Source: Salisapilia sapeloensis CBS 127946 (lineage: Eukaryota; Protista; Oomycota). Taken from it: a stretch of DNA of 60,644 bases. Under the pieces are notes generated by a model, which was given only the letters and a program-made list of their open reading frames with translations, made no database searches and had not been told where the DNA came from. The position numbers and the translations under genes are program-made. Positions within the stretch are counted from its first letter, which is position 1, and every line of letters starts with the position of its first letter. Shown in pieces: positions 24,291 through 30,968 of this stretch. The DNA lies in assembly GCA_023334545.1 (NCBI GenBank), contig JAADVB010000099.1, positions 1-60,644 on the forward strand, written 5' to 3'.

Positions 24291-26850
24291 CTACTTTTTA
24301 GATCGATGAACTGGTGATAATGCTTTTTCGATCGAGATACTTCGAGATACGACTTTAGGCTTGATTCTAGACTCCTGGTTTTCATGGTGATTGGAAGCAG
24401 GAGGAAAAGTATGCTTTCGAGCTACCTTTCGGTCTTTTTGATCGGTAGATGTCTTTTTGGAAACACGATCTCGGTCGTTAATAAGATCCAGAACACCTTG
24501 AAATTGGTACGCGAATCCGCGAGTCGGACGAATATCGCGAGCTATTGGAATCATATGATGGTCTCTCAACCTATTGTAACCATGGATAGGTAGCATGAAG
24601 CCATAACGATTCTTTCCAATAGCCATGCAGTCGGTTGATGGGTCGCTCGAGTCTGACGTCAGTCCGACCCAATTCCAAAGACGCAAGTTCCGAACCCAAG
24701 CTGTATTCGCTACGAGCCGGGCAGTATGGCCTCGGTAGACACGTTGAATGTTCAAAGCAGCGTGCAATGTACGTATTTTCATTGTTGGAACAGCGTATGA
24801 CCTTGACGGTAGATAGAGTACCACGGTTTTACCGTATTGAAAACCATTTCGCTCATTCACGAAATGTGTAATTGAAAGTATTCCGGGGTCGTCTCTCCAC
24901 ATGTGCCTCGTAAGCCATCCTTTGACCATCTTTTGAATAGAAATTGCGCCATAGAACCTTTTGTGAATCCAAATACGCCGCCTATAGCGCATCCAAGCGA
25001 TCTGGATTGCACTTGCATTTTGCTCGCTATGTATCTTGTCCATTCGACTTCTCTCTTCCTCCGCCTTCTTCCTCTTCCGATCTCTTATATTTCTTGAAAG
25101 TACATGGCGAGCTCTCCATCGTCGGAAAGAGATAATCTGAACCTCTAACTCGATCAAGTTACGGTCTGCTTCCTTTTGTAAATCGCGCATGTAAAGCATT
25201 TCTTCTCGAAAAGCCCAAGCGAGGAGACGTTGGCGATAGGATCGGTAATTACGTTGAATGCGCAGACAAGCTTTTAATCTTCGCGACGTCTTTCTAGCAA
25301 TTGCACCGACCCATATTCGATGGATCGTCGATATGCTCGAAATTACTCTGTTCTTATGTGCTTTATATTCCTGTCTACCTATCCATCTCCTTACATACGT
25401 CTGCAGCACTTTCGTCGCGCGTATTCTCTGTAGAGCTTGCATTTCATGTCGAATTTCGCGCACACGACGTCTCGACCGATTACCGCGAAAGATACGTTGG
25501 ATTCGAGTTGCAACCACAGGTGCTCTTCGAGCATAGTGAATCCTCCACAGCAGATCCTTAACTACAACTAGAACCCGATTTTCATCCCGTATAAAAACTG
25601 TGATAAGCGCTGCAATGAGCAACATTGCCTTGGATAGAAATTTTGATAATCTAGACCGGTTTGAATGGGATTTTACAATGGTCATCGACTCAAATTCAGA
25701 TGTGGAAAGAGGATGCTTTGGTGCTAACGGATGTTTGGTTTTGTCCGTAACTTCAGATTCTCTTTTGCACTCTTTCAATCCAGGAACATCAAATTCGGAT
25801 GAAGCAAAAACGCATTCACTTCTCTTGTCGAATGTCAGCGTTGCCAAGTAAGATTCGAGGTGATTGCGGCACATGCCGAAAGAATTTAAACGATGAATCG
25901 GTGTACACGATGGAGCACTCGACTTGCTCTTTTTGTATTCATGAATGCACTTGGGCGTGTGGTAGCCGCAAAAAGAAAGAAATGATCCGGGCAAAGATGG
26001 ATGACCAAGGACCCGATTTGTGCATTTCCACAGATATGCGCTTCCAGAGTGTTCCTTTTGCCACCTGCACAGACTTTGAGCATGTAATCCCATGCCACTA
26101 CTTGCTCTCTTTAAGGTTCCGCCTCTCCGAAGATACGAGTAAACTTCCTTCTTCGTTCCATGTATCAAACTGATCGTGAATACGCCTGGAACGTTAATTG
26201 GCCGTACACGTGCTGGTACTCGCTGCAGGGTGCCACGCTCTTCTGTCGCTGTACTTTCATAACAGCCCAAGCAAAGTCCTTCAGCATTTGGAATTTCGAT
26301 GCTTTTGCTCTTGTCGAGTGGATGATCCGCATGGACACATTCACGGACGTGCCAAAGACAAAACCTTTCACGTTTGTGCATGCTTCCGTTTTCATCTAGT
26401 TGGGGATCGTTTCCTTTAACTTTAGGGAAAAAGGGATTGACGCAACGATAAGCCTTGCCTCCCAGGCGCTCTCTAGCATCTTTTTTAGTGTTTGCATTTA
26501 TATAGCATAAATTTTGCCTACTGCCATGTACACTGGTCATCAGTTATACTGTCCGCTTGGACTCGAAGGTTACTCTGGAAACCGTTCAATTCTTCATCCA
26601 TTGCTGCAGCTACATCACCGATCCTGTTTTGCATAGCAGTGCCCAAACTTTCACGTTCAATACGCGTTTTCGCCACACTTGTGTTCGATGCTTGTTTCCA
26701 TCTCCACTTGCCTTCAAGTTCCGCCAAGTATTTCCTTGCGTTCCACTCTTTAATCGATATCTCGTTGTTATAATCCCCATACTCTTCAATAGCATTAGAT
26801 AGTTTCCTTCTCCCTGGGCTTTGTGCATATGCACTACGTCTCCTTGGCAT
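24291..26850 (-). CDS. Multi-IQ-motif protein with two N-terminal Cys/His repeats (intron 26473-26521)
   Basis: About seven IQ-like motifs, e.g. IQRIFRGNRSR, IQRNYRSYRQR, IQKMVKGWLTR and IQRVYRGHTAR. A 49-nt GTAGGC...CTAG intron fuses the 26518-26850 and 24291-26540 ORFs. Confidence 0.8.
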
Positions 26851-27190
26851 ACCTCAGATTATCTCACTTTATAGGATCAAAAGTTCGTTCTTCGGCGACA
26901 TGAAACACCTACTCTTCAACAGTCATCATATTATCCTCAAAGCGACTCCAAGAAGTGTCGCTTCAAAGTCCATTCTTTTTGCAACGACTCTGGAAAGCTC
27001 ATTGAGACTTTATTTAATCAATCGTTGCAATGTCTAGTCGATGCATGCGTCTTTCGAACGGAAGATTACGAGGGAGAATGGAATTTTACGCGGTTCTTGT
27101 CCTGTGGCTAGCCCTGGTCCCACTTTGTCTTTCGTCCAAAGGTATAATGTGTGCTATCAGTGCCTTTTCGAAGTAGAACCACCTCATCAC

Positions 27191-29386
27191 ATGACGAATG
27201 TAGATGACAACATGCACGACACCTTTATGCTCAAAGAAAATGAAGGAATAAAAGGTATTCCTATTGCAAGTGATGCGCTCGTCGTTGGGGTGATGATCAC
27301 ATTCCTGATCACTCTTTCCATTGCATTCGAAGTATCTAGTGGATACTTAAAGGATTCAACGGACGACATGAACATGCCATTCGTGAACACTGCCTTTAGT
27401 GACCTCACGACGCTCGGATTCATTGGATTGATCCTTTATATCGCCACAAAGATAGAATTATTTTCCTACATATCATCCGCAGCCTTTGGCCACAAGGAAA
27501 AAATTGTTGAGGCTGTAGAAGAACTCCACATGGGTCTATTCCTCTTTATCCTTGTCTTTCTACTTTTATGCTGTGCTCTTCTAAGGCTCGGCACTCAAGC
27601 TCAAAATGAATGGCGTGAGTTTGAGCGAAATGCAAGTGACATTCCAATTGCTATATCAGCGTATACACTCGCGACAGAAACCCCTCGATCCTGGAAAGAA
27701 TATTTTTCATTGCATCGCTATTTGCGAGCTCGGAAAGCTCGAAGGGAGCTGACTTATCTTGCTTTGCGAAAAAGGTTTCTAGATTACCGGTCAAACCATC
27801 CTGATCCTGGTACTGCGCACAGTTTAGCGAAAGAATTTCAGTTGAACGCGTACGCTCCATTTCCATTCAATGAATACCTGTCTATCATTTATGGTGGAAT
27901 GATGGCCAAACTGATCGAACTCGACGCTTACACTTGGATTGGACTTGAAGTAACTCTCGTTGTATCCCTTGCAATATGCAGTGCATTAGGAACTAGTACA
28001 AGAATCTGGGTTTTGATGGTGTTTGGGCTTGCCCTCATCGCAATGAATCGGTATGTCTACAAGCGCATCTATGATGCCAGGACTTTGCTAACTCCACCAG
28101 CAATGCTAATGGATGCTGAAAGACTACGTCGGAAAAATGAATGGCGTTCACAATTTATGCTTCCGCTGTATGAATCCAACGAGCAGTCTCATATGCTGGA
28201 AAGTGTACAGATATCAGAGGTAGATTTTACTCCACCTTACTTGGAACTACTTCCCGGTGGAGGTTACCATTTGTCTGAAGCTGAACTGCAGATTTATCAG
28301 CGAAAGCTAGTGGGAGGAAGAGGAGACGGTGCTAAACTAACTATCTTTTTAACGCGACTGCTCTTCTTGCTAACTGCGATGCATTTATCTATCTTCCTGA
28401 TGCAGACCATGTCTGAGATCAATAAGGTCTTTTCATCAATCCTGCTCAGATGTATCCTGTACACATGCTTTCTGCTTCCGACTATACTTGTTACCAGCCT
28501 GTCAACAGATATTGCAAGAGATGTTTTGTATGCATTTAATGTGGAGCATCTGAAGTCTGCTCGAGTTATGGTGACAATCTCTCGACTAGTGAAAGCAAGG
28601 CAAACGTTGCGTACATTACGCTGTATTGCCGAAATGAAGATATACCTTCGAGAAGCGCTACAACGAGAAAAAGCTCGAGGCTTTGCAAAACACGTGCTTC
28701 CTATCACAGCTTCACTTCATGCTTCCTCCTCGATGTATTCTACCGTTTTTTCACCCAAGAACAAAAGGAAAGGTGGCAATAGCTCAAGACAAATTTCTCC
28801 TGCGCGACGTTCAAGAGCTAAACGTTCTGAGTCGTACATTTCATCCTTATCTAGTTCAAATACTGGCTCCCGCCCAATATCACCGTTGTCATCCTACACC
28901 TCGCCTCGCCATAGGCAAAGTGATGCTTATCAACTTGAAATGGAGCGTCGTGATATTCATGCAATATTCTGCTTATTTGACGTGGATGGGTCGGGAACTG
29001 TATCGCGAGAAGAGATGAGAACTTTGCTAGAGGCGATAACGTATCATGTGGACGAAGCTGACTTGACGAAGCTCATGAAAGAGCTTACGGGTGGAGATGA
29101 TGAACAAGATGACATTACATTTGAAGCTTTCTATAATTGGTGCCTTCAACGCATTCATCAAAGCACCCGGACGAAAGAGGATCTTATTGAGGAAGTGTTT
29201 CGGCTTGTTGATGCGGATGGGAGTGGGTATATTACTGTCGAAGAGTTCATTTCTATCTTTAAGACGCTTGGTCAAGCGATTGAAGCAGACGATGTTCGTG
29301 AACTTGTCTATCAAATGGACCGCAACGATGACAATAGGATCGACTTAGATGAGTTCAAGAAGATGCTCTACAAACACGAAGTTTAA
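27191..29386 (+). CDS. MLO-like multi-pass membrane protein fused to a C-terminal calmodulin-like EF-hand domain
   Basis: About seven hydrophobic segments with MLO-like motifs LTTLGFIGLILY, VEELHMGLFLF, TYLALRKRFL and FPFNEYL...TW. EF loops DVDGSGTVSREE, DADGSGYITVEE and DRNDDNRIDLDE, plus one degenerate hand. Start placed at ATG 27191; ATG 27041 is also in frame. Confidence 0.8.
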   Translation: MTNVDDNMHDTFMLKENEGIKGIPIASDALVVGVMITFLITLSIAFEVSSGYLKDSTDDMNMPFVNTAFSDLTTLGFIGLILYIATKIELFSYISSAAFGHKEKIVEAVEELHMGLFLFILVFLLLCCALLRLGTQAQNEWREFERNASDIPIAISAYTLATETPRSWKEYFSLHRYLRARKARRELTYLALRKRFLDYRSNHPDPGTAHSLAKEFQLNAYAPFPFNEYLSIIYGGMMAKLIELDAYTWIGLEVTLVVSLAICSALGTSTRIWVLMVFGLALIAMNRYVYKRIYDARTLLTPPAMLMDAERLRRKNEWRSQFMLPLYESNEQSHMLESVQISEVDFTPPYLELLPGGGYHLSEAELQIYQRKLVGGRGDGAKLTIFLTRLLFLLTAMHLSIFLMQTMSEINKVFSSILLRCILYTCFLLPTILVTSLSTDIARDVLYAFNVEHLKSARVMVTISRLVKARQTLRTLRCIAEMKIYLREALQREKARGFAKHVLPITASLHASSSMYSTVFSPKNKRKGGNSSRQISPARRSRAKRSESYISSLSSSNTGSRPISPLSSYTSPRHRQSDAYQLEMERRDIHAIFCLFDVDGSGTVSREEMRTLLEAITYHVDEADLTKLMKELTGGDDEQDDITFEAFYNWCLQRIHQSTRTKEDLIEEVFRLVDADGSGYITVEEFISIFKTLGQAIEADDVRELVYQMDRNDDNRIDLDEFKKMLYKHEV

Positions 29387-29645
29387 CTTTTTCGATTGCT
29401 CCGTGACGTATTGTGACATTTTAGTGATGGTATAAACGACAAGCTAAAAGCATCAATCTGAGCAAGATGATTGCCATCTATCGAGTAGACGTCACAGTTG
29501 AAAAATAATACTGATTGAATGAAACAATGTGGTTGGGGCATGGAGTGGTGCTAGCTCTATAGGAGTAAGCATTCGATGAAGGATGAGATGCCATATCTCG
29601 ATTTACCGTCGAAGCAGTAAGCCTGGTACTCCATACCATAGCATC

Positions 29646-30968
29646 ATGACTTCCCCGCTTTCCACTCTGAAGAGAAGCCTTCTTTTGGCGATACTGACTG
29701 TCGTTTGGCATTGTTGCGCAGTCCAGACGCATGATGCATTCCCAGTTCGTCTTGGGACCGGATGCAAGTACGGTGACTACAATTCTTTACGACAAATTTC
29801 CGATGGCACGAACAGCGAACGCGGCAAGCCATACTATAGTTACACACTAAGATCTCGTTTGGGCGAAGGATCGTATGTGCTCCACTTCGTGCTTTTCCGC
29901 TTGCCCTCTGAAGACGAGCTAGTCGTCTATAACGACTCTGAAGAAGTGTACGCGTTGAAGGGATCGGACACCTCGGAAAGCTTCTACTCAGCTCCAGTTG
30001 TTGGAAAGGATTTTACGCTCAAGTTGTTCAAGCACTCTAGCACATCCACTGAACAATTGGAAGATAAATGCTTTGGCTTTGAAGTGGACAGCTTCATCTT
30101 CTTATCGACAGAGAATGTCGAGCAAATGGAAGCACTGAACTTCACCAGTGGAATCGTTTCACATGGCTCGCAATCTCCAGCAGATAAAGGGAACGACGAA
30201 AGCTTGTGTGGGGAAGACGAATCAAAGCCAGCTGTATGCTTCGAGACGGAGGAAAATGCTGACAAATACCGAGCAGCACGAGGTGTCGCAAGACTCACAA
30301 TTTCTCGTACGCAGACCATGCGAGTCGCATACTGCACGGGATTCCTTCTTGGATGTGAGGGCCATTTGCTTACCAACCAACATTGCATTGAGAACTGGTT
30401 GGATGCATTCAACACTGAGGTTGAGTTCTTTGCTGAGTCACCTGTATGTGATGCTGAAGCTAGCAACTCAAGCGAAAGTTGCACCGAACGTGGCTCTTGC
30501 GCTGGGAGCATTGTCTTTCCATCAACAACTCTCGTCGCTGTATCAGAGGAACTTGACTATGCTCTCGTCAAGCTCCCATACTTGCAAACCTTTAGAGGGA
30601 TTACCTCATTGTACGAAATCGGCACATACCTTCAGCTGCGAGAAAGCGGGCCAGTTGTCAAGGAAGAAGTTTACATCCCTCAACACCCACTCGGTGGTGG
30701 AAAGCGTATCTCCATGGCTTCGGATGCATCACCTGGTGTTATTGAATCCCTCACAGCAGACGCTTGCGGTGGTTCCGATGCTGGGTACTACTTGGACACG
30801 CAAGATGGCAGCTCTGGTTCTCCTGTCATCGGAGTTTCGGACAACACGGTCGTAGCGCTTCATCATTGCGGTGGGTGCTTAAATGGAGGTATCTTATCCA
30901 ACAAGATTATCGAAGACCTGAAAAGCAAGAATGTACTTCCACGGTGCGCGGTGGCGCAGCAACCTTAG
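29646..30968 (+). CDS. Secreted trypsin-like serine protease of bacterial lysyl/glutamyl-endopeptidase type, with an N-terminal pro/CUB-like domain
   Basis: Signal-like LLLAILTVVWHCCA. Catalytic triad LLTNQHC, ELDYAL and TQDGSSGSP, followed by VVALHH. Confidence 0.88.
   Translation: MTSPLSTLKRSLLLAILTVVWHCCAVQTHDAFPVRLGTGCKYGDYNSLRQISDGTNSERGKPYYSYTLRSRLGEGSYVLHFVLFRLPSEDELVVYNDSEEVYALKGSDTSESFYSAPVVGKDFTLKLFKHSSTSTEQLEDKCFGFEVDSFIFLSTENVEQMEALNFTSGIVSHGSQSPADKGNDESLCGEDESKPAVCFETEENADKYRAARGVARLTISRTQTMRVAYCTGFLLGCEGHLLTNQHCIENWLDAFNTEVEFFAESPVCDAEASNSSESCTERGSCAGSIVFPSTTLVAVSEELDYALVKLPYLQTFRGITSLYEIGTYLQLRESGPVVKEEVYIPQHPLGGGKRISMASDASPGVIESLTADACGGSDAGYYLDTQDGSSGSPVIGVSDNTVVALHHCGGCLNGGILSNKIIEDLKSKNVLPRCAVAQQP

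What the first reader, a model, noticed from the sequence alone, without database searches (positions are those of the whole stretch)
27191..29386. MLO-like channel with a built-in calmodulin-like domain
Seen: about seven TM segments carry ordered counterparts of plant MLO motifs (LGFISLLL ~ LGFIGLIL; LHQLHIFIF ~ VEELHMGLF; DYxTLRxGFI ~ TYLALRKRFL; FDFHKY...LW ~ FPFNEY...TW), followed by a basic Ser/Arg linker and four EF-hand positions, three with canonical loops. Established: plant MLOs are Ca2+-permeable channels inhibited by calmodulin binding to the C-tail, and MLO-like sequences exist in some protists. Inference: the Ca2+ sensor is fused here, giving a self-gated Ca2+ channel. In an oomycete it could act in zoospore, encystment or tip-growth signalling. 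No function is known to me.
Basis: partly seen in the sequence, partly recalled or inferred. Interest (0 to 1): 0.78.

Follow-up and report, generated by a model that had tools for sequence, protein, structure and literature searches.

The report
Oomycete MLO-like protein fused to calmodulin
This is an intact oomycete gene for a seven-helix membrane protein distantly related to plant MLO calcium channels, with a calmodulin-like calcium sensor fused to its tail; the fusion was already described in oomycetes in 2016 and its function is still untested.

Summary
Window 27191-29386 (+) lies in one uninterrupted ORF (27041-29386). It encodes seven hydrophobic helices, a conserved basic helix after TM7, a 79-residue Ser/Arg/Pro-rich disordered linker, and four EF-hands, three of them with canonical loops.

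The MLO reading is supported at family level.
- The window protein scores only 14.9-16 bits against Pfam Mlo (cut-off 24).
- Orthologues reach 25-29 bits.
- Non-oomycete relatives found with an oomycete-only membrane-domain profile (E 1e-19 to 1e-46) reach 37-53 bits, in the same register.
- Mlo is the only Pfam family shared across the membrane domains, and no solved fold competes.

The protein is a divergent "MLO-like" protein, not a canonical land-plant MLO. It has no extracellular cysteines, no FWFxxP motif and no Trp-containing calmodulin-binding motif.

The architecture is not new. Kusch et al. 2016 (PMC4824068) reported MLO-EF-hand "Rosetta stone" fusions in oomycetes, Albugo included, citing intron-free ORFs.

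The self-gated Ca2+ channel idea is plausible but inferred. I add a candidate cis target for the sensor, the basic 1-8-14 helix at residues 457-490. I also found the same fusion in ochrophytes, a red alga, an amoebozoan and a choanoflagellate.

The scan's other notes on this stretch are the same finding read again.

The parts
27041..29386 (+).
   Evidence: the upstream in-frame stop is seen; there is a single copy in the window
27275..27592 (+). TM1 (aa 29-49), short cytosolic loop, TM2 with the D/E-L-T-T-L-G-F-I-G motif (aa 70-90), short outer loop without Cys, and TM3 with the L-H-M-x-L-F motif (aa 112-134)
   Evidence: Hydropathy; helices in the model; G76, H113 and F117 are invariant in 42 distant relatives; the window's Pfam Mlo match maps aa 107-156 to profile 143-192
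27593..27928 (+). Large basic cytosolic loop 2 (aa 135-246). It carries EWREFE (compare plant WxxWE), Y189-x2-L-R-x2-F196 (compare plant DY-x2-[LM]RxGF) and F224-P-F-x2-Y229 (compare plant FDF-x2-Y)
   Evidence: Alignments; plant motifs quoted from Kusch 2016; orthologue Mlo matches span profile positions 143 to about 300
27929..28060 (+). TM4 (aa 247-267, starting at the conserved W249) and TM5 (aa 271-290), joined by a 3-residue outer turn
28061..28336 (+). Cytosolic loop 3 (aa 291-382), basic, with invariant LTPP and PPY motifs. The plant FWFxxP motif is absent here, though LFWxxxxGP is present in the consensus of the distant EF-fused relatives
28337..28504 (+). TM6 (aa 383-405) and TM7 (aa 416-438). 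The outer loop between them has no Cys
28559..28660 (+). Conserved basic amphipathic helix after TM7 (aa 457-490; net charge +6; LVKARQTLRTLRCI fits a basic 1-8-14 pattern). It is a candidate in-cis docking site for the EF-hand domain and sits where plant MLO has its calmodulin-binding domain
   Evidence: Invariant A469 R470 T472 L473 R474 L476 R477; conserved across the wide family; pLDDT about 94 in the model; motif counts against shuffles. The target role is inference
28682..28918 (+). Disordered Ser/Arg/Pro-rich linker (aa 498-576) with one conserved island, P562-x-S564-P565 (RPISPLSSY)
28928..29374 (+). Calmodulin/centrin-like domain with four EF-hands (aa 580-728). Canonical loops are at aa 597-608, 674-685 and 710-721; the second hand (about aa 633-646) is degenerate

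Best explanation
The gene encodes a divergent member of the MLO family ('MLO-like'). It has seven transmembrane helices, with the N-terminus outside and the C-terminus in the cytosol. The cytosolic tail carries, in order, a conserved basic amphipathic helix, a disordered Ser/Arg-rich linker and a calmodulin-like domain with three working-looking EF-hands.

Shown: the architecture, its homology to Mlo at family level, and its conservation.

Inferred mechanism: like plant MLOs, the membrane domain forms or controls a Ca2+-permeable pathway. When cytosolic Ca2+ rises, the tethered EF-hand domain binds Ca2+ and clamps onto the post-TM7 helix of its own or a neighbouring subunit. This would change gating, most likely as negative feedback that shapes Ca2+ transients. 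The separate calmodulin of land plants is here built in, much as the calmodulin-like domain is built into CDPK kinases.

A role in the sporangium or zoospore stage is suggested only by orthologue names.
For: Identity:
- Pfam Mlo reaches 25.2, 28.9 and 25.7 bits for orthologues P0001, P0003 and P0005, against a cut-off of 24. All map to profile positions 143 to about 300.
- A profile built from oomycete membrane domains only finds 720 proteins at E<=1e-3.
- Full-length hits P0198, P0161, P0136 and P0127 (E 1.8e-19 to 1.1e-26) score 53.2, 52.8, 43.6 and 37 bits against Mlo.
- 8 of the 10 best distant hits pass the cut-off, in register.
- Mlo is the only Pfam family shared across the 49 membrane domains, matching 30 of them.
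- 28 of the 30 nearest named Atlas clusters are Mlo.

Fusion:
- It is one ORF, found in 62 oomycete proteins.
- 42 of 42 long relatives carry EF-hands although the search used the membrane part alone.

Topology:
- Seven hydrophobic segments, with basic loops 2 and 3 and the tail on one side.
- A confident model, pLDDT 88.9.

Sensor and target:
- Three canonical EF loops.
- A conserved, basic, amphipathic post-TM7 helix.

Analogy:
- MLOs carry Ca2+ in heterologous cells, and the calmodulin-binding domain was proposed to gate NTA (PMC12369466).
- Calmodulin binds the proximal tail (preprint 10.64898/2026.04.10.716904).
- Kusch 2016 read the fusion as a Rosetta stone for the MLO-calmodulin pair.
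Against: - The window protein alone is below Pfam's cut-off (14.9 and 16.0 bits).
- The matches cover TM1-TM5 only. No HMM match reaches TM6, TM7 or the tail.
- Land-plant hallmarks are missing: no extracellular Cys, no FWFxxP, no Trp in the proximal tail.
- Kusch 2016 judged calmodulin-binding-like sequences outside land plants 'likely not directly related'.
- Whether MLOs are channels themselves or recruit channels is still debated (abstract of the 2026 preprint).
- The basic 1-8-14 pattern is permissive: 9.8 of 25 are expected from shuffles, and orthologues are not independent.
- The full-length model gave no confident docking of the EF domain (pLDDT 41-66 around residues 450-500).
- No expression data could be obtained.
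Confidence: 0.6

Rival explanations
1. It is an MLO-like protein with a tethered Ca2+ sensor, but not a channel. It would act as a Ca2+-regulated membrane scaffold that directs polarised secretion or recruits other channels, as has also been proposed for plant MLOs.
For: [quoted passage not shown] Plant MLOs interact functionally with the exocyst (PMC10980356, listed). [quoted passage not shown]
Against: An acidic residue sits four positions before the LGF motif of TM2 (D71 here, Glu in most relatives). TM2 and TM3 are strongly conserved, and these are the helices predicted to line the plant MLO trimer pore. This fits a permeation role, but it is only suggestive.
Confidence: 0.28
2. The membrane domain is not related to MLO. 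It would be an unrelated seven-helix family whose few short motifs resemble MLO by chance.
For: The window protein's own Mlo score is sub-threshold. No structural match to anything was found: best TM-score 0.26 in the Atlas, and best VIA-align Z 7.2 to generic helical proteins.
Against: There is a chain of significant matches in a constant register. No other family is shared across the membrane domains. The absence of a structural match is expected, because no MLO chain was found in the PDB by sequence.
Confidence: 0.04
3. The fusion is an artefact: two neighbouring genes read as one, or a decaying gene.
For: None found.
Against: It is a single stop-free ORF of 2.2-2.3 kb. The same order of parts occurs in 62 oomycete proteins and 42 distant relatives, several of them from transcriptomes. 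Invariant residues run through both halves.
Confidence: 0.01

Closest known systems
Oomycete MLO-like / EF-hand 'Rosetta stone' fusion proteins of Kusch et al. 2016 (Genome Biol Evol 8:878, PMC4824068; examples named there: ETL41083, CCA21210)
   Same: Same architecture, with an MLO-like membrane domain fused at its C-terminus to a calmodulin-like EF-hand domain. Same group of organisms: Phytophthora, Hyaloperonospora, Albugo, Pythium, Aphanomyces and Saprolegnia are listed. Same intron-free ORF. The window gene is an orthologue of this set, 45-60% identical to the oomycete proteins retrieved.
   Different: Nothing in kind. The paper gives no function, no candidate cis target helix, and treats the fusions as several independent events.
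Land-plant MLO proteins (barley Mlo, Arabidopsis MLO2, NORTIA/MLO7) with free calmodulin
   Same: Seven helices with the same orientation and large cytosolic loops 2 and 3. Shared motifs with the same spacing: E-L-x2-L-G-F-I in TM2, L-H in TM3, Y-x2-L-R-x2-F and F-x-F-x2-Y in loop 2. A basic helix just after TM7, followed by a disordered tail. A partnership with a four-EF-hand sensor.
   Different: The sensor is covalently attached. The outer loop 1 is about 20 residues with no cysteines, where plants have a longer loop with three conserved Cys. There is no FWFxxP and no Leu/Trp calmodulin-binding signature. Similarity is only about 15-29 bits for oomycete proteins.
Calcium-dependent protein kinases (CDPKs), as a working analogy only (my own knowledge)
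   Same: A calmodulin-like domain is fused after an effector domain and acts on an adjacent junction helix in cis, which removes the need for free calmodulin.
   Different: The effector is a soluble kinase, not a membrane protein, and there is no homology outside the EF-hands.

Membership tests
MLO (Pfam PF03094 Mlo) | Significant sequence match to the family profile | tested here: met
   Met at family level. Orthologues score 25-29 bits, and distant EF-fused relatives 24-53 bits, against a cut-off of 24, all in one register. Those relatives are linked to the oomycete profile at E 1e-19 to 1e-46. The window protein on its own is sub-threshold (14.9 and 16.0 bits).
MLO (Pfam PF03094 Mlo) | Seven transmembrane helices, N-terminus outside, C-terminus cytosolic, large cytosolic loops 2 and 3 | tested here: met
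   Seven hydrophobic segments, with the basic loops and the EF-hand tail on the same side. Confident helical model. Most orthologues start with a signal-peptide-like segment, which fits an outside N-terminus. This is a prediction, not an experiment.
MLO (Pfam PF03094 Mlo) | Conserved loop-2 motifs DY-x2-[LM]RxGF and FDF-x2-Y (Kusch 2016) | tested here: met
   Y189-LA-L192-R193-KR-F196 and F224-P-F226-NE-Y229 have the same spacing. R193 and Y229 are invariant, and F196 and F224 nearly invariant, in 42 relatives. Gly is replaced by Arg, and Asp by Pro.
MLO (Pfam PF03094 Mlo) | FWFxxP motif before TM6 | tested here: not met
   The window has GDGAKLTIFLTRL at that place. The motif survives as LFWxxxxGP in the consensus of the distant EF-fused relatives.
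MLO (Pfam PF03094 Mlo) | Four invariant extracellular cysteines (loops 1 and 3) | tested here: not met
   The Cys residues are at 127, 128, 263, 421, 426, 478, 594 and 651, and none lies in a predicted outer loop. Kusch 2016 found the same for non-plant MLO-like proteins.
MLO (Pfam PF03094 Mlo) | Calmodulin-binding domain with a quasi-invariant Trp in the proximal C-tail | tested here: inconclusive
   There is no Trp between residues 319 and 649. A conserved basic amphipathic helix with a 1-8-14 pattern does occupy the same position. Homology to the plant domain could not be tested because no plant sequence could be fetched.
MLO (Pfam PF03094 Mlo) | Ca2+ permeation | not testable with these tools
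   This needs electrophysiology or Ca2+ imaging.
Calmodulin-like EF-hand proteins (PF00036 / PF13499) | Two pairs of helix-loop-helix EF-hands with canonical 12-residue loops | tested here: met
   EF-hand_1 at E 3.5e-20 and EF-hand_7 at E 3.2e-19. Residues 577-728 align end to end with centrin, troponin C and calmodulin. Loops 1, 3 and 4 are canonical and loop 2 is degenerate.
Calmodulin-like EF-hand proteins (PF00036 / PF13499) | Ca2+ binding and Ca2+-dependent target binding | not testable with these tools
   This needs biochemistry.

The most novel reading that the evidence does not exclude
The MLO-calmodulin fusion may be one ancient, eukaryote-wide lineage rather than several independent fusions. 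It is present in oomycetes, ochrophytes, a red alga, an amoebozoan and a choanoflagellate. On this reading its post-TM7 basic helix is the homologue of the plant calmodulin-binding domain, and land-plant MLO plus free calmodulin would be the derived, split state. Some members have further gained a cyclic-nucleotide-binding domain.
Probability: 0.3. Interest if true: 0.55.

Novelty: already known. Interest (0 to 1): 0.3.

Why it matters
MLO proteins are a major target for mildew-resistance breeding in plants, and their biochemical role is still argued over: a channel in their own right, or a recruiter of channels. A natural protein in which the calcium sensor is welded to the MLO core is a convenient test object. 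It is a single polypeptide that needs no plant partners, and it has a defined sensor and a candidate target helix to mutate.

For oomycete biology it is a conserved, usually single-copy, uncharacterised candidate component of calcium signalling. That signalling governs sporangium cleavage, zoospore behaviour and encystment.

None of this is new as an idea, since Kusch et al. raised it in 2016. The value of this locus is as one more clean, intron-free example.

Tried and rejected
- RNA evidence: no run was listed for the ORF. Start codon and expression stay open.
- Solved structures by sequence: nothing for the membrane domain. A weak S100-like match in loop 2 (E 0.085) was judged not significant.
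- Fold searches with the confident membrane-domain model. The Atlas gave TM-scores of 0.26 or less. PDB Foldseek gave nothing at E<=1e-3. VIA-align against 48,161 chains gave a best Z of 7.2 to generic helical proteins. So no rival fold was found, but there is also no structural confirmation.
- Fetching land-plant MLO sequences for a direct profile-profile or structural comparison failed. The second word search, with the broad alignment A4, returned essentially only the oomycete family (the one exception, P0181, was already in the query). I therefore relied on Pfam's Mlo model and on intermediates.
- The full-length AlphaFold2 model (pLDDT 65) gave no confident placement of the EF domain on the tail helix.
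- Kusch 2016 supplements are not held.
- Literature searches for functional work on oomycete MLO-like proteins found only plant MLO papers.
- I considered and rejected a functional head-to-head pair with the IQ-motif gene, because the arrangement is not conserved.
Full report
**What is there.**
Window 27041..29386 (+) is one uninterrupted ORF of 781 codons. An in-frame stop lies just upstream of 27041. The first 50 residues of the long form have no counterpart in orthologues, so the start stays ambiguous. No RNA run was listed. The gene is single-copy in the window.

**Anatomy.**
- Hydropathy gives seven membrane segments: 29-49, 70-90, 112-134, 247-267, 271-290, 383-405 and 416-438.
- The two long loops (135-246 and 291-382) and the tail are basic, so they are predicted to be cytosolic. 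That places the N-terminus outside. Most orthologues also carry a signal-peptide-like start.
- AlphaFold2 on residues 27-488, using a 49-sequence alignment, gave pLDDT 88.9 and pTM 0.84, an all-helical model. The full-length model was poorer (pLDDT 65), and residues 498-576 were below 50.
- After TM7 comes a conserved helix, residues 457-490, with net charge +6. Next is a 79-residue linker with 22 Ser, 9 Arg, 5 Lys and 6 Pro.
- The C-terminal domain is calmodulin-like. EF-hand_1 matches at E 3.5e-20, and residues 577-728 align end to end with centrin, troponin C and calmodulin.
- EF loops 1, 3 and 4 are canonical (DVDGSGTVSREE, DADGSGYITVEE, DRNDDNRIDLDE). Loop 2 is degenerate, and it is variable in length across the family.

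**Is the membrane part MLO?**
- The window protein alone scores 14.9 bits against Pfam Mlo, or 16.0 bits for the membrane part alone. The cut-off is 24. The match maps residues 107-156 to profile positions 143-192.
- Sixty-two oomycete proteins share the whole architecture. Identity over the membrane part is 56-60% for the best Pythium-type hits, about 51-53% for Phytophthora and 47-50% for Saprolegniales.
- Several orthologues pass the cut-off in the same register: 25.2, 28.9 and 25.7 bits, at profile positions 143 to about 300.
- A profile built only from oomycete membrane domains (A2) was scored against 1.84 billion representative proteins. It found 720 hits at E<=1e-3 and 347 at E<=1e-10.
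- Among full-length hits, P0198, P0161, P0136 and P0127 (E 1.8e-19 to 1.1e-26 to the oomycete profile) score 53.2, 52.8, 43.6 and 37 bits against Mlo.
- Eight of the ten best distant hits pass the cut-off. Their matches fall on TM1-2 (profile 7-70) or TM3-5 (profile 143-330).
- Across 49 membrane domains, Mlo is the only Pfam family that recurs, matching 30 of them, with a best E of 2.1e-14. The only other hit was a single sub-threshold Virul_fac_BrkB match.
- 28 of the 30 nearest named Atlas clusters by language-model features are Mlo.
- The residues invariant or nearly so across 42 distant relatives are L75 G76 F77, H113 F117, R193 F196, and F224 Y229 W249. They keep the spacing of the land-plant motifs DY-x2-[LM]RxGF and FDF-x2-Y listed by Kusch et al..
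- No solved MLO structure was found by sequence. Fold searches gave nothing specific. There is therefore no rival family, but also no structural confirmation.
- My conclusion is that this is a genuine but divergent MLO-family member.

**How it differs from land-plant MLO.**
- There are no cysteines in any predicted outer loop, and outer loop 1 is only about 20 residues.
- There is no FWFxxP motif before TM6, although LFWxxxxGP is present in the consensus of the distant EF-fused relatives.
- There is no Trp in the proximal tail.
- Kusch et al. reported the same losses for non-plant MLO-like proteins.
- It should be called MLO-like, not an MLO in the land-plant sense.

**Prior knowledge.**
- Kusch et al. 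2016 (PMC4824068) list MLO-like proteins in Phytophthora infestans, Hyaloperonospora, Albugo candida, A. laibachii, Pythium ultimum, Aphanomyces and Saprolegnia.
- They describe C-terminal fusions to calmodulin-like EF-hand domains in green algae, oomycetes and Apusozoa. They call them Rosetta-stone proteins for the MLO-calmodulin interaction, and they note intron-free ORFs (ETL41083, CCA21210).
- The architecture is therefore published.
- I found no functional study of the oomycete proteins.
[quoted passage not shown] 2022, as summarised in PMC12369466). Calmodulin binds Leu/Trp in the proximal tail, and trimeric pores lined by TM2/TM3 are predicted (preprint 10.64898/2026.04.10.716904). The same preprint's abstract leaves open whether MLOs are channels themselves or recruit other channels.

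**Mechanism (inferred).**
- The stretch after TM7 is conserved well beyond oomycetes. The pattern is roughly V-x-S-[VI]-E-x2-[KR], then a basic amphipathic helix (V-x-R-x2-K-T-[RK]-x3-R-x-L-x-L-L).
- In the window it reads LVKARQTLRTLRCI, a basic 1-8-14 pattern. That pattern occurs in 25 of 25 oomycete orthologues, against 9.8 expected from shuffles. It occurs in 16 of 42 distant relatives, against 8.3 expected. This is weak statistics, because orthologues are not independent and the pattern is permissive.
- The helix sits where plant MLO binds calmodulin. The simplest model is that the tethered EF-hand domain binds this helix in a Ca2+-dependent way and alters gating, giving built-in feedback on Ca2+ entry.
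- An acidic residue four positions before the LGF motif of TM2 (D71 here, Glu in most relatives) is conserved. From memory, it matches the Glu of the plant ELMxLGF motif near the predicted pore mouth. This last point is a lead, not a test.
- I put identity at about 0.95 and the self-gated channel mechanism at about 0.4. The main rival is a Ca2+-regulated scaffold that does not itself conduct ions.

**Wider family.**
- All 42 long relatives retrieved with the membrane profile alone carry EF-hands.
- Named members come from the choanoflagellate Salpingoeca urceolata, the amoebozoan Cochliopodium minus, the red alga Timspurckia, and the ochrophytes Aureoumbra, Rhizochromulina and Chrysophaeum.
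- Four also have a cyclic-nucleotide-binding domain, with a best E of 1.4e-10.
- This coherence hints at one old fusion rather than several, contrary to the suggestion in Kusch 2016. I could not root a tree, because no unfused plant MLO sequences could be fetched.

**Surroundings.**
- Downstream, the Trypsin_2-type protease gene (window 29583-30968) follows the MLO-EF gene in Pythium oligandrum too. DSPc and PAP2 genes lie further on there, as in the window.
- Upstream, the window has an IQ-motif ORF head to head (24291-26540, minus strand).
- In P. infestans an IQ gene lies two genes upstream, on the same strand, separated by a Peptidase_C1 gene. In P. oligandrum the immediate upstream neighbour is Peptidase_C1. 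In Saprolegnia the neighbours differ.
- The neighbourhood is ordinary conserved synteny, and the head-to-head pairing is not conserved.

**Verdict.**
The kind is already known. Interest is modest. The new elements are a candidate cis target helix, the breadth of the fused lineage, and the cNMP-domain variants.

Noticed in passing
relatives P0074, P0214 (Aureoumbra lagunensis) and others in alignment A3: Four of 42 MLO-EF relatives also carry a cyclic-nucleotide-binding domain, with a best E of 1.4e-10. Where it was located (P0074, a weak 23-bit match) it lies between the membrane part and the EF-hands. This triple architecture is not mentioned in the passages of Kusch 2016 that I read.
   Followed up: partly
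relatives P0071, P0073, P0077/P0215: MLO-EF fusion proteins occur in a choanoflagellate (Salpingoeca urceolata), an amoebozoan (Cochliopodium minus) and a red alga (Timspurckia oligopyrenoides). The family therefore reaches into Holozoa, although Kusch 2016 found none in animals or fungi.
   Followed up: partly
window 27788-27890 (aa 200-233, cytosolic loop 2): The loop-2 segment around EFQLN..FPFNEYLSII gives a weak S100-type EF-hand match with the family profile (E 0.085). In orthologues it reads Q-L-N-x-D-x-R-F-P-F-N-E-Y, like a degenerate EF loop. The match is not significant, and it is more degenerate in the window copy.
   Followed up: partly
window 24291-26540 (-) and loci L001, L002, L003: The head-to-head IQ-motif ORF is not a conserved partner. 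In P. infestans an IQ gene is two genes upstream on the same strand, and in P. oligandrum and Saprolegnia the immediate neighbours differ. Downstream order (Trypsin_2, then DSPc and PAP2) is shared with P. oligandrum.
   Followed up: partly
window 26518-26850 (-): A 110-aa ORF overlaps the start of the 749-aa IQ-motif ORF by about 20 bases in another frame. It may be an upstream exon or extension of that gene, or a small separate gene.
   Followed up: no
window 27041-27274: Most orthologues begin with a signal-peptide-like hydrophobic segment followed by an acidic stretch. The window copy has neither, from either candidate ATG (27041 or 27191).
   Followed up: partly
window 28874-28894 (aa 562-568): The only conserved island in the disordered linker is P-x-S-P (RPISPLSSY here, PPLSPLAAY in most orthologues). 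It looks like a proline-directed phosphorylation site.
   Followed up: no
locus L003 106-3494 (-): In Saprolegnia diclina, a 1011-aa protein with several EF-hand matches lies about 3.5 kb upstream of the MLO-EF gene.
   Followed up: no
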